64,000 bases of DNA from Octopus sinensis. Lineage: Eukaryota. How positions within the stretch are numbered: position 1 is the first letter of the stretch; each line of letters starts with the position of its first letter. This document shows positions 22,287-23,729 of the stretch, in pieces. The DNA is taken from the NCBI RefSeq assembly GCF_006345805.1, contig NW_021835754.1, positions 7,204-71,203 on the forward strand, in the 5' to 3' direction. The notes beneath the pieces are model-generated. The model made no database searches. It was not told the DNA's origin and saw nothing but the letters and a program-made list of their open reading frames with translations. The translations under genes and the position numbers were made by a program.

Positions 22287-22649
22287 AATAGTAAAAAGTG
22301 AAACTACACAAGGCTTGTTTTAAAAGGTTAAAGAATATATATTTAAGTCAATATATTCAACCACGTGCTTCCACAAACCAACTTTCTTATCATCTATATA
22401 TATATATAGTTATTGATATGAATCAAATTAAATTTTTCATACTAACGAACCCATTATATTAATATATATATATATTATATATAGTGTGACGTATTTTTGC
22501 CATTTCAATATGCTAACCCCTAAGGGTGGATGCTACTGTAGTTTTTAGCCCCAGGAGGACACACTCCTCCAGCTGGCCATAGACACACTATCTGTGTCCT
22601 GTCAGTATTTGCAAAGGGAAGTCATCCTTCCCGTCTTCAACTTATGATA

Positions 22650-22693
22650 CACACGGACTCGAGTTCGAGGTATTGACCTCTCGTCAGCGTGTG
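22650..22693 (-). ncRNA. Type I hammerhead ribozyme, unit 1 (GAA rather than GAAA)
   Basis: CACACG CUGACGA GAGG UCAAUA CCUC GAAC UCGA GUC CGUGUG; one core A is missing (mutation or homopolymer error). Confidence 0.6.
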
Positions 22694-22998
22694 ACAATCA
22701 TAGTTTGTCGCCGAGAATTAGATTCCTTCACAAAAACTTATACTTTTTCCAGCGCCCACTGTCGCTGATATTGAAAAAGTGAAATCAAACAATGATAATA
22801 TCAAAGTGAGTTATATACAGTAGCGGTACACATCCGTGACGTATTTTTGCCATTTCAATAATGGCTAACCCTAAGGGTGGATGCTACTGTAGTTTTTAGC
22901 CCCAGGAGGACCACTCCTCCAGCTGGCCATAGACACACTATCTGTGTCCTGTCAGTATTTGCAAAGGGAAGTCATCCTCCCGTCTTCAACTTATGATA

Positions 22999-23043
22999 CA
23001 CACGGACTCGAGTTTCGAGGTATTGACCTCTCGTCAGCGTGTG
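22999..23043 (-). ncRNA. Type I hammerhead ribozyme, unit 2 (intact core)
   Basis: CACACG CUGACGA GAGG UCAAUA CCUC GAAAC UCGA GUC/CGUGUG. Predicted cleavage between plus-strand positions 23005 and 23004. Confidence 0.88.
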
Positions 23044-23351
23044 ACAATCATAGTTGTCGCCGAGAATTAGATTTCCTTCACAAATACTTATACTTTTTCC
23101 AGCGCCCACTGTCGCTGATATTGAAAAAGTGAAATCAAACAATGATAAATATCAAAGTGAGTTATATACAGTAGCGGTAACACATCGTTACGTATTTTTG
23201 CCATTTCATATGGCTAACCCCTAAGGGTGGATGCTACTGTGTTTTTTAGCCCCAGGAGGACCACACTCCTCCAGCTGGCCATAGACACACTATCTGTGTC
23301 CTGTCAGTATTTGCAAAGGGAAGTCATCCTTCCCGTCTTCAACTTATGATA

Positions 23352-23395
23352 CACCGGACTCGAGTTTCGAGGTATTGGACCTCTCGTCAGCGGTG
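23352..23395 (-). ncRNA. Type I hammerhead ribozyme, unit 3 (intact core)
   Basis: CACCG CUGACGA GAGG UCCAAUA CCUC GAAAC UCGA GUC/CGGUG. Confidence 0.85.
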
Positions 23396-23729
23396 ACAAT
23401 CATAGTTTTCGCCGAGAATTAGATTTCCTTCACAAATACTTATACTTTTTCCAGCGCCCACTGTCGCTGATATTGAAAAAGTGAAATCAAAACAATGATA
23501 AATATCAAGTGAGTTATATACAGTAGCGGTAACACATCGTGACGTATTTTTTGCAAATACTGACAGGACACAGATAGTGTGTCTATGGCCAGCTGGAGGA
23601 GTGGTGTCCTCCTGGGCTAAAACCTACAGTAGCATCCACCCTTAGGGGTTAGCCATATTGAAATGGCAAAAATACGTCACGATGTGTTACCGCTACTGTA
23701 TATAACTCACTTGATATTTATCATTGTTA

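What the first reader, a model, noticed from the sequence alone, without database searches (positions are those of the whole stretch)
22486..23728. Retrozyme-like tandem array: ~351-nt units each carrying a type I hammerhead ribozyme
Seen: three head-to-tail units (about 350, 351 and 352 bp) with no meaningful ORF, flanked by TA-rich sequence. Each has on the minus strand stem I, CUGACGA, stem II (GAGG/CCUC), GAAAC-UCGA-GUC and the stem I partner. Stem I extends further (AUGAU/AUCAU). Stem III is only 2 bp closed by the palindrome CUCGAG. The unit has three more short hairpins (ggagga/tcctcc, gacaca/tgtgtc, gggaag/cttccc). Known: minimal type I hammerheads with palindromic stem III loops are typical of Penelope-like pLTRs and of metazoan non-LTR retrozymes, which self-cleave from tandem transcripts to give circular RNAs and often work as dimers. 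Inference: a minus-strand transcript would release a ~351-nt monomer that could circularise and be copied by a Penelope RT. I do not recognise this family as described in cephalopods.
Basis: partly seen in the sequence, partly recalled or inferred. Interest (0 to 1): 0.92.

Follow-up and report, generated by a model that had tools for sequence, protein, structure and literature searches.

The report
Hammerhead-ribozyme retrozyme array in TA microsatellite
This is a short tandem array of a ~350-nt non-coding mobile element (a "retrozyme") whose RNA should cut itself into unit-length pieces with a hammerhead ribozyme; the class is already known in animals, so it is a new family member, though its insertion scars point to Penelope-type enzymes as the copier.

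Summary
The repeat is real but its layout differs from the description. There are 3.03 head-to-tail units (350/351/352 bp, 22486-23554). A 179-bp inverted, 5'-truncated copy (23550-23728) follows. The minus strand carries three type I hammerheads. Two have a complete catalytic core (Rfam Hammerhead_1, 32.2 and 30.5 bits against a gathering score of 34; window-wide E 4e-4 and 2e-3). The third has GAAC instead of GAAAC and is probably dead. By published definitions the motif is a canonical metazoan type I hammerhead, not a Penelope "minimal" one. It has helix I of 6 bp, helix II of 4 bp, and helix III of 2 bp with a palindromic UCGA loop. The unit has no ORF, is 43% GC and folds strongly (z = -5.7). 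It meets the sequence criteria for a non-LTR retrozyme. The insertion sits in (TA)n and is flanked by the window's only two + strand copies of TTATATATAG. Its two arms are joined head-to-head, and their outer ends lie 49 nt apart in the unit. That pattern matches Penelope-like element integration. The window holds no Penelope gene and no further copy, and I could not identify the host. Self-cleavage, circular RNA and mobilisation are inferred, not shown. Verdict: new member of a known kind; moderate interest.

The parts
22475..22484 (.). Left copy of the candidate target-site duplication TTATATATAG
   Evidence: This 10-mer occurs only twice on the + strand of the 64-kb window, and both copies abut the insertion.
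22486..23554 (-). Direct tandem array, 3.03 units of 350-352 nt. The sense strand is the minus strand. It runs from monomer position ~158 at the 5' end to position 170 at the 3' end.
   Evidence: TRF: period 350, 3.0 copies, 96% matches. Alignment of the units. Monomer coordinates.
23351..23396 (-). Hammerhead 3. The core is complete. Helix I is 5 bp (CACCG/CGGUG) and loop 2 is UCCAAUA. Cleavage falls between 23357 and 23356.
   Evidence: Rfam RF00163: 30.5 bits, E 4e-5 in the local search and 1.6e-3 window-wide, model positions 1-45. Sequence.
22999..23043 (-). Hammerhead 2. The core is complete. Helix I is 6 bp, helix II is 4 bp and helix III is 2 bp plus a UCGA loop. Cleavage falls between 23005 and 23004.
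   Evidence: Rfam RF00163: 32.2 bits, E 1e-5 in the local search and 4.2e-4 window-wide. Sequence.
22650..22693 (-). Hammerhead 1, with a defective core (GAAC instead of GAAAC). The would-be cleavage site lies between 22656 and 22655.
   Evidence: Sequence. No Rfam hit even at E <= 10.
23005..23356 (-). The 352-nt monomer that cleavage by hammerheads 3 and 2 would release.
   Evidence: Cleavage geometry. Linear MFE -116.4 kcal/mol, z -5.66. Circular MFE -111.7 kcal/mol, z -5.5.
22656..23004 (-). A second monomer of 349 nt, released only if hammerhead 1 is active.
   Evidence: Cleavage geometry. The hammerhead 1 defect.
23550..23554 (.). Head-to-head junction on the microhomology TTTGC, which is shared by the antisense end of the direct array and the sense start of the inverted copy.
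   Evidence: Sequence reading.
23550..23728 (+). Inverted, 5'-truncated partial unit covering monomer positions ~40-219. It contains no hammerhead, and its sense 3' end faces the right-hand (TA)n.
   Evidence: Inverted repeats I2-I7. Alignment. 95-100% identity to the direct units.
23727..23736 (.). Right copy of the candidate target-site duplication TTATATATAG. Its first two bases overlap the end of the element.
23728..23955 (.). The (TA)n microsatellite that served as the target. Its short left remnant is at 22452-22485.
   Evidence: TRF. Joining the two flanks gives an uninterrupted TA-rich tract.

Best explanation
This is a genomic copy of a non-LTR retrozyme, a non-autonomous, non-coding retroelement made of ~350-nt tandem units. 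Each unit encodes a canonical metazoan type I hammerhead ribozyme on the minus strand.

Proposed life cycle:
1. A minus-strand transcript runs through the array.
2. The hammerheads cut after the GUC triplet at 23357/23356 and 23005/23004. [quoted passage not shown]
3. Helix III is only 2 bp, and its 8-nt palindrome ACUCGAGU can pair between neighbouring ribozymes. Cleavage is therefore probably most efficient as a double hammerhead on the multimeric transcript.
4. A host RtcB-type RNA ligase circularises the monomer into a stable, highly base-paired circle.
5. A Penelope-like element (PLE) RT/GIY-YIG protein encoded elsewhere in the genome nicks both strands of an AT-rich target. It primes cDNA synthesis from both nicks, starting at two nearby internal template sites and running round the template several times.
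6. The two cDNAs are joined head-to-head at a microhomology.

Shown by sequence: the array, the ribozyme cores and helices, the cleavage geometry, the strong predicted fold, the TA target, the TSD, the inverted 5'-truncated arm, the two different outer ends and the microhomology junction.

Inferred only: transcription, self-cleavage, circularisation, and the identity of the reverse transcriptase.
For: - Tandem array.
- All invariant hammerhead nucleotides are present in two consecutive units. These are C3 U4 G5 A6 N7 G8 A9, the G10.1-C11.1 pair, G12 A13 A14, the A15.1-U16.1 pair and C17.
- Rfam Hammerhead_1 matches full length in the same register in two units. The E-values are 1e-5 and 4e-5 locally and 4.2e-4 and 1.6e-3 window-wide. 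These are the only sub-threshold hits not caused by microsatellites.
- Helix sizes equal the published canonical metazoan type I architecture.
- Unit 3 has lost one whole A-U pair of helix I through matching 1-nt deletions on both strands. About 0.003-0.009 such events are expected by chance.
- The unit is 350-352 nt, 43% GC, has no ORF and no Pfam hit, and carries a ribozyme in one polarity only.
- The monomer fold has z = -5.66 as a linear RNA and -5.5 as a circle. The rest of the molecule closes helix I as a branched quasi-rod.
- Enforcing the double hammerhead in a two-ribozyme transcript costs only 0.2 kcal/mol. The canonical single fold is 8 kcal/mol above the MFE.
- The array meets the retrozyme criteria of PMC7229834 and of the 2026 survey, which requires at least two consecutive complete hammerheads in a TRF repeat.
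- PLE-type integration marks are present: a (TA)n target, an inverted 5'-truncated copy upstream in the sense orientation, and outer 3' ends 49 nt apart. The TSD TTATATATAG is found on the + strand only at the two ends. These match the published PLE features.
Against: - Neither hammerhead reaches Rfam's gathering score of 34.
- One of the three ribozymes has a broken core.
- The single-motif hammerhead fold is not the predicted MFE, and helix III has ~0 ensemble probability.
- Variation among the units does not avoid base-paired positions (18 of 30 variable columns are paired against 62.5% expected, P = 0.46). These three copies therefore show no whole-molecule structural constraint.
- The 64-kb window contains no other copy and no Penelope RT or GIY-YIG remnant. 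The nearby RT is LINE/R2-type.
- No relatives could be retrieved, so there is no comparative support.
- No promoter was identified, and no Pol III A or B box is present.
- The integration signature rests on a single locus.
Confidence: 0.8

Rival explanations
1. It is a decayed, inactive relic. On this view a retrozyme-derived minisatellite was kept or resized by unequal crossing-over, and is no longer transcribed, cleaved or mobilised.
For: - Only three units are present, and one has a core deletion.
- The units differ by ~4%, with many indels.
- Variation is not depleted in paired positions.
- The 64-kb window holds no other copy.
- No promoter was identified.
Against: - Two consecutive hammerheads keep every invariant nucleotide and all three helices.
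- The only change inside a ribozyme helix is a compensated loss of a base pair.
- The TSD and the junction are still sharp. That argues against great age or extensive post-insertion rearrangement.
Confidence: 0.3
2. The unit is simply the pseudo-LTR (terminal repeat) of an autonomous Penelope-like element. On this view the locus is a solo or partial pLTR tandem left by a PLE insertion, not a separate non-autonomous family.
For: - PLEs insert as partial tandems, with inverted 5'-truncated copies, into TA repeats.
- Retrozyme families in Xenopus are sister to PLE pLTRs.
- The integration marks here are PLE-like.
Against: - No RT or GIY-YIG coding sequence lies between or beside the units, or anywhere in the window.
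- Three full ~350-nt units in tandem fit retrozyme arrays (150-450 bp).
- The ribozyme is the canonical type carried by retrozymes. It lacks the features of the minimal PLE type, namely helix II of 7-8 bp, a bulge after position 9 and no helix III.
Confidence: 0.12
3. It is an assembly artefact. On this view the copy number, the indel-rich differences between units or the inverted arm come from long-read consensus errors or a chimeric read.
For: - Differences between units are mostly 1-nt indels, and 6-8 of every 7-10 indel columns sit in homopolymers. That is typical of unpolished long-read consensus.
- Fold-back chimeras do occur in long-read data (my own knowledge).
Against: - The inverted arm is not a perfect fold-back. 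A 116-nt single-orientation segment separates the 61-nt arms, and the junction uses a microhomology.
- A TSD flanks the whole structure.
- Elsewhere in the window an RT pseudogene stays in one frame for 330-366 codons, and a 182-bp tandem shows 0-1 gaps per unit. The assembly is therefore not generally indel-ridden.
- Retrozyme repeats are reported to be heterogeneous, with small indels.
Confidence: 0.07
4. The hammerhead motif arose by chance in an ordinary satellite repeat.
For: The Rfam scores are below the gathering score.
Against: - The core motif is expected 0.07 times per window.
- A relaxed core-plus-helix II motif is expected 0.01 times per window.
- Every invariant nucleotide and all three helices are in place, with the helix lengths typical of animal type I hammerheads.
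- The Rfam E-values remain at or below 2e-3 window-wide.
Confidence: 0.01

Closest known systems
Metazoan non-LTR retrozymes (Cervera & de la Pena 2020, PMC7229834), in particular the Mytilus galloprovincialis family (350-390 bp repeats)
   Same: - Short tandem repeats within the 150-450 bp range.
- GC content below 50%.
- No ORF, LTR, PBS or PPT.
- One type I hammerhead per unit, in one polarity.
- A highly self-paired monomer.
- A TSD longer than 4 bp.
- The mussel repeats have nearly the same unit size and come from the same phylum, if the host really is a mollusc.
   Different: - No sequence similarity could be tested because no mussel sequence is held here.
- The mussel hammerheads are said to lack most of the conserved loop 1/loop 2 nucleotides. 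This motif keeps a 6-nt loop 2 (UCAAUA) that resembles the Rfam consensus CAAAUA.
- RNA expression and circularity were shown for mussel but not here.
Amphibian satellite 2 / axolotl retrozymes (HHR_Amex2)
   Same: - Units of ~330-350 nt.
- A type I hammerhead with a very short helix III. HHR_Amex2 has a 2-bp stem plus a tetraloop.
- A palindromic loop that permits a double hammerhead.
- More efficient cleavage from dimeric constructs, which parallels the fold energetics found here.
   Different: - The amphibian families number 10^4-10^5 copies and often form long arrays. Here there is one three-unit array in 64 kb.
- HHR_Amex2 has a U-U mismatch at the base of helix II. This motif keeps the G10.1-C11.1 pair.
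Penelope-like element pseudo-LTRs with minimal hammerheads (Cervera & de la Pena 2014, PMC4209133; Craig et al. 2021, PMC8557442; Frangieh et al. 2024, PMC11167929)
   Same: - Type I topology.
- A palindromic 15.2-16.2 pair and loop 3.
- Tandem arrangement.
- Insertion into (TA)n or AT-rich DNA.
- An inverted 5'-truncated copy at the upstream end.
- Two alternative cDNA start sites tens of nt apart, the PLE "tail".
   Different: - There is no RT/GIY-YIG ORF.
- The ribozyme has helix I of 6 bp, helix II of 4 bp and a real helix III. Minimal hammerheads have helix II of 7-8 bp, helix I of 4-5 bp, a bulge after position 9 and no helix III.
- The distance between the two ends is 49 nt, against 30-40 bp for the PLE tail.
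Schistosoma Sm-alpha and cricket/newt hammerhead satellites (seed members of Rfam RF00163)
   Same: The core is the same, including C at position 7. The layout is the same: helix I of 6 bp, helix II of 4 bp, and a short palindromic helix III. The alignment covers the full length of the model.
   Different: The scores are 1.8 and 3.5 bits below the family's gathering score. The sequences of helix II and of the unit outside the ribozyme are unrelated.
Plant LTR retrozymes and viroid-like / HDV-like circular RNAs
   Same: Hammerhead self-cleavage of a multimeric transcript gives a unit-length RNA that is circularised and is highly base-paired.
   Different: - Plant retrozymes carry type III hammerheads inside ~350-bp LTRs, with a PBS, a PPT and 4-bp TSDs.
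- Viroid-like and HDV-like agents are RNA replicons, usually with ribozymes in both polarities.
- Here the element is genomic DNA with a ribozyme on one strand only.

Membership tests
Hammerhead ribozyme, type I (Rfam RF00163) | Invariant catalytic core: C3 U4 G5 A6 N7 G8 A9, G12 A13 A14, the A15.1-U16.1 pair and H17 | tested here: met
   The core is complete in hammerheads 2 and 3 (CUGACGA ... GAA ... A-U ... GUC). It is not met in hammerhead 1, which reads GAAC.
Hammerhead ribozyme, type I (Rfam RF00163) | Three helices around the core, with helix I open and helices II and III closed by loops | tested here: met
   Helix I is CACACG/CGUGUG, or CACCG/CGGUG in unit 3. Helix II is GAGG/CCUC with a 6-7 nt loop. 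Helix III is AC/GU with a UCGA loop.
Hammerhead ribozyme, type I (Rfam RF00163) | Rfam curated gathering score of 34 bits. This is an operational threshold, not a structural feature. | tested here: not met
   The scores are 32.2 and 30.5 bits. The default scan returns nothing. The E-values are 4.2e-4 and 1.6e-3 for the whole window.
Hammerhead ribozyme, type I (Rfam RF00163) | Site-specific self-cleavage 3' of H17 | not testable with these tools
   This needs in vitro transcription and a cleavage assay.
Canonical metazoan type I hammerhead (definition in PMC4209133) | Helix I ~6 bp, helix II ~4 bp, and helix III 1-2 bp capped by a 2-4 nt palindromic loop | tested here: met
   The motif has 6 bp (5 bp in unit 3), 4 bp, and 2 bp plus UCGA. 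Overall it forms the 8-nt palindrome ACUCGAGU.
Canonical metazoan type I hammerhead (definition in PMC4209133) | Conserved loop 1 / loop 2 nucleotides that make the tertiary contact | tested here: inconclusive
   Helix I has an internal loop (UGU opposite U) followed by AUGAU/AUCAU. Loop 2, UCAAUA, shares AAUA with the Rfam consensus CAAAUA. The 3D contact itself cannot be assessed here.
Penelope-type minimal hammerhead (min-HHR, PMC4209133) | [quoted passage not shown] | tested here: not met
   Helix II is 4 bp, there is no bulge after A9, and helix III with its loop 3 is present. The motif is therefore not filed as a min-HHR.
Non-LTR retrozyme (PMC7229834; operational criterion of bioRxiv 10.64898/2026.07.22.740005) | A tandem repeat of 150-450 bp units in which at least two consecutive units carry complete type I hammerheads with MFE below -5 kcal/mol | tested here: met
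   TRF gives period 350 and 3.0 copies. Hammerheads 2 and 3 are consecutive and complete. The hammerhead-domain MFE is -16 to -20 kcal/mol. The criteria are quoted.
Non-LTR retrozyme (PMC7229834; operational criterion of bioRxiv 10.64898/2026.07.22.740005) | Non-coding, GC below 50%, no LTRs, and a TSD longer than 4 bp when one is present | tested here: met
   No ORF exceeds 79 aa and none hits Pfam. GC is 43%. There are no terminal repeats apart from the tandem itself. The candidate TSD is 8-10 bp. PBS and PPT motifs were not searched for specifically.
Non-LTR retrozyme (PMC7229834; operational criterion of bioRxiv 10.64898/2026.07.22.740005) | The monomer RNA is predicted to be stable and highly self-paired | tested here: met
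   The linear MFE is -116.4 kcal/mol (z -5.66). The circular MFE is -111.7 kcal/mol (z -5.5), with 62% of bases paired.
Non-LTR retrozyme (PMC7229834; operational criterion of bioRxiv 10.64898/2026.07.22.740005) | Expression as abundant linear and circular unit-length RNAs | not testable with these tools
   No transcriptome data for the unidentified host is available.
Non-LTR retrozyme (PMC7229834; operational criterion of bioRxiv 10.64898/2026.07.22.740005) | Multi-copy family that co-occurs with autonomous Penelope-like elements in the same genome | not testable with these tools
   Only 64 kb is available. It holds no second copy and no PLE coding sequence. No eukaryotic genome DNA database is on hand.
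Autonomous Penelope-like element | An ORF encoding a TERT-like RT plus a GIY-YIG endonuclease between pseudo-LTRs | tested here: not met
   There is no such ORF in or near the array. The nearest RT (18847-20455) matches R2 and LINE-1 ORF2p structures, not TERT.
Viroid-like / HDV-like circular RNA replicon | Self-cleaving ribozymes in both polarities, and an RNA-only (non-genomic) existence | tested here: not met
   The + strand has no ribozyme hit even at E <= 10. The sequence is integrated in chromosomal DNA with a TSD.

The most novel reading that the evidence does not exclude
The locus may belong to a previously undescribed retrozyme family that is lineage-specific, possibly cephalopod. On that reading, its single clean insertion preserves a complete record of Penelope-type integration of a retrozyme RNA. 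Both target strands would have been primed in a TA repeat. cDNA synthesis would have started at two internal template sites 49 nt apart and run about three rounds of rolling-circle copying on one arm. The two cDNAs would then have been joined head-to-head by microhomology, leaving an 8-10 bp TSD. If many insertions genome-wide share this pattern, it would be locus-level evidence that Penelope-like elements mobilise animal retrozymes from circular templates. So far that has been argued only from co-occurrence and from pLTR homology.
Probability: 0.3. Interest if true: 0.55.

Novelty: new member of a known kind. Interest (0 to 1): 0.35.

Why it matters
Retrozymes are among the few places where a self-cleaving ribozyme has a clear job in an animal genome, and in other animals they yield very abundant small circular RNAs. 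Two questions about them remain open. One is which enzyme copies them back into DNA. The other is whether the template is the circle. This locus adds little to the first-order picture, because the class, the ribozyme type and the unit size are all as already described, including in a mollusc.

It does offer a clean, datable insertion whose ends, inverted arm, microhomology junction and TSD can be compared directly with the biochemistry reported in 2024 for a purified Penelope protein. Total RNA-seq from such a host could quickly show whether neural or germline tissues carry these circles.

Tried and rejected
- **Default Rfam scan of the window:** no hit. The permissive mode was needed.
- **Hammerhead pattern in public DNA:** IMG/VR gave 0 hits. 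JGI metagenomes gave 3 contigs (L001-L003) that share only the searched motif. They have no tandem repeat, no similarity to the unit and poor helices, so I rejected them as relatives.
- **Host identification, all unsuccessful:**
  - Homologues of the neighbouring LINE RT reach at most 60-73% identity, and the only named ones are from a coral and a sponge.
  - Homologues of the mariner fragment reach at most 66% identity and come from many phyla.
  - Exact look-ups of two window ORFs found nothing on record.
  - A literal search of papers for SINE sequence words returned 0 papers.
- **Indirect search for sibling copies:** I queried the protein collection with the array's six-frame ORF fragments, in case gene callers had called spurious ORFs on other copies. 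None of 8000 candidates was significant.
- **Other copies in the window:** sensitive BLASTN found none.
- **Hammerhead-like motif at ~27324 (-):** it is improbable by chance (1% of simulations). However, it is degenerate, Rfam does not hit it, and its surroundings do not align with the unit (score 35 against controls of up to 41). I rejected it as part of this element.
- **Structural constraint among units:** variable positions are not depleted in paired regions (P = 0.46).
- **Internal Pol III promoter boxes:** none found on either strand.
- **Pfam scan of the small ORFs inside the array:** nothing.
- **Literature search for cephalopod retrozymes or hammerheads:** nothing relevant.
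Full report
**1. What is in the sequence.**
Tandem Repeats Finder reports a single array at 22486-23551 with period 350, 3.0 copies, 96% matches and 3% indels. Cut in register, the units are 350, 351 and 352 bp and 43% GC, against 37% for the window. A short TA tract lies on the left (22452-22485). 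A (TA)n tract of about 112 repeats lies on the right (23728-23955), followed by (TATG)n. The last 179 bp (23550-23728) are not a fourth head-to-tail unit. They are an inverted partial unit (inverted repeats I2-I7; alignment) that is 95-100% identical to the direct units. No stop-to-stop frame in the array exceeds 79 codons, and none matches Pfam.

**2. The ribozyme.**
On the minus strand each unit carries the following, shown here for unit 2 (23051-22988):

5'-AUGAU UGU CACACG CUGACGA GAGG UCAAUA CCUC GAA AC UCGA GU C / CGUGUG U AUCAU-3'

In standard hammerhead numbering this reads:
- helix I of 6 bp;
- C3 U4 G5 A6 C7 G8 A9;
- helix II of 4 bp, beginning with the conserved G10.1-C11.1 pair and closed by a 6-nt loop;
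- G12 A13 A14;
- helix III of two pairs (A15.1-U16.1 and C15.2-G16.2) closed by UCGA;
- C17, the cleavage-site base;
- the 3' strand of helix I.

Beyond a small internal loop, AUGAU/AUCAU prolongs helix I. Helices II and III are closed and helix I is open, so the topology is type I.

Rfam's Hammerhead_1 model aligns over its full length (positions 1-45) at 23043-22999 (32.2 bits) and 23396-23351 (30.5 bits). The E-values are 1e-5 and 4e-5 in a 1.6-kb search, and 4.2e-4 and 1.6e-3 when the whole window is searched. Both scores lie just under the curated gathering score of 34, which is why the default scan is empty. In the permissive whole-window scan, every other hit is a microsatellite-driven match to an miRNA or similar model. 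The two hammerheads are the only hits in complex sequence. A plain core pattern is expected 0.07 times per window and occurs three times.

The unit-1 copy (22693-22650) reads GAAC instead of GAAAC. It has lost one base of the invariant G12-A13-A14-A15.1 run, and Rfam does not detect it even at E <= 10. The + strand has no ribozyme match.

**3. Which kind of hammerhead.**
Cervera and de la Pena (PMC4209133) define the canonical metazoan type I hammerhead as follows. Helix I is about 6 bp, helix II is about 4 bp, and helix III is 1-2 bp capped by a 2-4 nt palindromic loop. The present motif fits exactly. They contrast this with the "minimal" hammerheads of Penelope-like elements. Those have helix II of 7-8 bp, helix I of 4-5 bp, an unpaired base after position 9, and no helix III. 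None of these applies here. This canonical type is the one found in animal retrozymes.

**4. Cleavage geometry and folding.**
The C17 bases are at + strand coordinates 23357, 23005 and 22656. Cleavage by hammerheads 3 and 2 would release a 352-nt RNA (23356-23005). A second monomer of 349 nt (23004-22656) needs the defective hammerhead 1.

The 352-nt RNA is predicted to fold far better than shuffled controls. As a linear molecule its MFE is -116.4 kcal/mol against -88.2 +/- 5.0 (z = -5.66). As a circle its MFE is -111.7 kcal/mol (z = -5.5), with 62% of bases paired. In that fold the rest of the molecule closes and extends helix I as a branched quasi-rod. Helices I and II of the ribozyme are retained. 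The antisense strand also folds well (z = -4.7), as expected for a largely helical molecule.

Taken alone, the ribozyme domain does not adopt the hammerhead fold as its MFE. The canonical structure scores -11.8 kcal/mol against -19.9 for an alternative that uses the palindrome. Helix III has essentially zero ensemble probability. Two copies can form an 8-bp helix III through ACUCGAGU (-39.3 against 2 x -17.5 kcal/mol). In a real 446-nt transcript containing hammerheads 3 and 2, enforcing that double hammerhead costs only 0.2 kcal/mol. These numbers ignore tertiary contacts. They suggest cleavage as a double hammerhead on multimeric transcripts, with protection of the monomer or circle. This was shown for newt and axolotl repeats and proposed for viroids. 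Invertebrate retrozyme hammerheads with a 2-bp helix III have nevertheless been seen to cleave as single motifs, so either mode remains possible.

**5. The insertion as a whole.**
I number the monomer from the first base after the cleavage site.
- The direct array runs, in sense orientation, from about position 158 through three hammerheads to position 170. That is 3.03 units.
- The inverted copy covers positions ~40-219 and carries no hammerhead.
- The two arms meet head-to-head (5' end to 5' end) at 23550-23554, on a TTTGC microhomology.
- Both sense 3' ends therefore point outwards into the TA repeat. They correspond to different template positions, 170 and 219, which are 49 nt apart.
- The decamer TTATATATAG occurs only twice on the + strand of the 64-kb window, at 22475-22484 and 23727-23736, directly abutting the two ends. 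It is a likely 8-10 bp target-site duplication.
- Joining the flanks gives an uninterrupted TA-rich tract.

Each of these features has a published counterpart in Penelope-like elements:
- Partial tandems occur with "an inverted 5'-truncated copy ... adjacent to the upstream" repeat, and insertion is biased towards (TA)n (PMC8557442).
- A purified Penelope protein prefers AT-rich DNA and cleaves and extends both target strands.
- That protein also starts reverse transcription at two adjacent internal template sites. This explains the 30-40 bp "tail" found at one end of genomic copies (PMC11167929).

The inverted arm is not a perfect fold-back, because 116 nt in a single orientation lie between the 61-nt arms. 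That argues against a chimeric-read artefact.

**6. Variation among units.**
The differences are mostly 1-nt indels, largely in homopolymers, which at first sight suggests long-read consensus error. Two controls speak against a generally poor assembly:
- An RT pseudogene 2.2 kb away stays in a single frame over 330-366 codons when aligned to its homologues.
- A 182-bp tandem at 13156-13703 shows 0-1 gaps per unit.

Indel heterogeneity among retrozyme repeats and RNAs is also reported in coral and mussel. I cannot exclude polishing errors specific to this array. In particular, the GAAC of unit 1 is a homopolymer-length difference.

One change stands out. Hammerhead 3 has CACCG/CGGUG where the others have CACACG/CGUGUG. 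One whole A-U pair has been removed by matching deletions on the two strands, which lie 38 nt apart. With 6-10 private indels per unit, 0.003-0.009 such events are expected by chance. Over the whole molecule, by contrast, variable columns are not depleted in paired positions (18 of 30 against 62.5% expected, P = 0.46). These three copies give no evidence of constraint outside the ribozyme.

**7. Surroundings and host.**
The window is repeat-rich animal DNA. It holds many microsatellites, two abundant SINE-like families, LINE RT fragments, a mariner DDE fragment and a weak Pif1-like fragment.

The RT nearest the array (18847-20455, + strand, with stop codons) matches R2 and LINE-1 ORF2p structures and not telomerase-like RTs. 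Its homologues are widespread invertebrate LINE-type proteins. The window contains no Penelope RT or GIY-YIG sequence and no second copy of the unit.

I could not identify the host. The two SINE families look to me like the abundant octopus SINEs.

**8. Relatives.**
None could be retrieved. Pattern scans of IMG/VR and JGI metagenomes gave nothing usable. An indirect search with the array's six-frame ORF fragments also found nothing. No eukaryotic genome DNA collection is available here, so copy number, family consensus and covariation remain untested.

**9. Mechanism, with shown and inferred steps marked.**

Shown by sequence:
- a three-unit array with two intact canonical type I hammerheads in consecutive units;
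- cleavage sites 352 nt apart;
- a strongly structured monomer;
- integration into (TA)n with a TSD, an inverted 5'-truncated arm, two distinct outer ends and a microhomology junction.

Inferred from the retrozyme literature (PMC7229834, PMC7761336):
- a minus-strand transcript is made;
- it self-cleaves, probably through double hammerheads;
- a host RtcB-type ligase circularises that RNA.

Inferred from the insertion scars and the Penelope biochemistry:
- a Penelope-like RT/endonuclease encoded elsewhere nicked both strands of the TA tract;
- it primed cDNA synthesis from both nicks at two nearby internal sites;
- it copied about three rounds on one side and about half a unit on the other;
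- the two cDNAs were then joined.

The near-integral length of the direct arm is compatible with copying of a circular or multimeric template. It starts at about position 158 and ends at position 170, after 3.03 turns. This does not prove that kind of template.

**10. Comparison and membership.**
The locus meets the sequence-level criteria for a non-LTR retrozyme. The unit size falls within 150-450 bp, and GC is below 50%. There are no ORFs or LTRs. At least two consecutive units carry complete hammerheads. The monomer is self-paired, and the TSD exceeds 4 bp.

The features that cannot be tested here are circular RNA expression, multi-copy status and coexistence with Penelope-like elements.

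The locus is not an autonomous Penelope-like element, its ribozyme is not a min-HHR, and it is not a viroid-like replicon. The defining features of all three were tested and not met.

The closest described relatives in kind are the mussel retrozymes (350-390 bp) and the axolotl HHR_Amex2 family, which has a 2-bp helix III plus a tetraloop.

**11. Novelty and score.**
The class has been known since 2020 and includes a mollusc. A 2026 preprint already argues that animal retrozymes derive from Penelope pseudo-LTRs. This is therefore a new member of a known kind. I found no paper in the searchable library that links retrozymes or hammerheads with cephalopods. The host is unverified, however, and absence from that library is weak evidence. 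The modest added value is the clean Penelope-like integration signature on a retrozyme insertion, which could be generalised genome-wide. Interest: 0.35.

Noticed in passing
window 27285-27335 (-): There is a degenerate hammerhead-like motif here: CCAC CUGAAGA UUGUC-GAUCAA-GACAA GAAAAAC GAUU GU A GUGG. It lies 3.6 kb from the array on the same strand. A core-plus-helix II pattern of this kind appears outside the array in only 1% of Markov-1 simulations. However, it has U10.1-A11.1 instead of G-C and two extra A's after GAA, Rfam does not hit it, and its flanks do not align with the 350-nt unit.
   Followed up: partly
window 18847-20455 (+): This is a LINE/R2-type reverse transcriptase pseudogene. 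It keeps a single frame for ~330-366 codons, with a few stop codons and one frameshift near 20270. It ends at a TA microsatellite (20510-20555), 2.2 kb from the array. Its best homologues are 60-73% identical, and the named ones come from a coral and a sponge. Its PDB matches are R2 and LINE-1 ORF2p.
   Followed up: yes
window 5821-7078, 8037-9472 and 59302-60854 (+): These are further frameshifted fragments of the same RT family, found by tblastn with P0001 and P0015.
   Followed up: partly
window 91-479, 13925-14122, 29880-30078, 33168-32970, 44391-44194, 52873-52674 and others: At least 13 copies of a ~195-nt SINE-like repeat are present, 80-91% identical to one another. Each ends in a TA-rich tail. 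ARAGORN finds no tRNA in the window. From memory they resemble abundant octopus SINEs, but this could not be tested.
   Followed up: partly
window 13156-13703, 14743-15093, 30856-31436, 42661-42841, 58433-58611: A second SINE-like family with a ~182-nt unit is present. It includes a perfect-register triple tandem (98-99.5% identity) at 13156-13703 and an inverted dimer at 14743-15093.
   Followed up: no
window 21951-22202: A 131-bp sequence is repeated 1.8 times at 97-99% identity, about 280 bp to the left of the retrozyme array. Its nature is unknown and it has no counterpart elsewhere in the window.
   Followed up: no
window 36851-37477 (+): This is a mariner/Tc1-type transposase fragment (Pfam Transposase_1, E 3.7e-27). 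Its best homologues are at most 66% identical and come from nematodes, insects and mammals (SETMAR-like names).
   Followed up: yes
window 25167-25547 (+): There is a weak match to the Pif1 helicase 2B domain (20.7 bits, below the cut-off of 23.9). It may be a Helitron remnant.
   Followed up: no
whole window, e.g. 11470-11590, 32045-32117, 63240-63312: In Rfam's permissive mode about 200 sub-threshold hits to mir-297, mir-3149, MIR837 and similar models appear, with E-values down to 1e-12. All lie on TA/TG/AAT microsatellites and are low-complexity artefacts. Small E-values in this mode should not be trusted in repeat-rich DNA.
   Followed up: yes
L001 871-910 (-), metagenome contig Ga0136655_1028475: This non-repeated metagenome sequence has CUGACGAG...CGAAACUCGAGUC, a possible 4-bp helix I (CUGU/ACAG) and an imperfect helix II. 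It may be an unrelated genuine hammerhead, or it may be chance.
   Followed up: no
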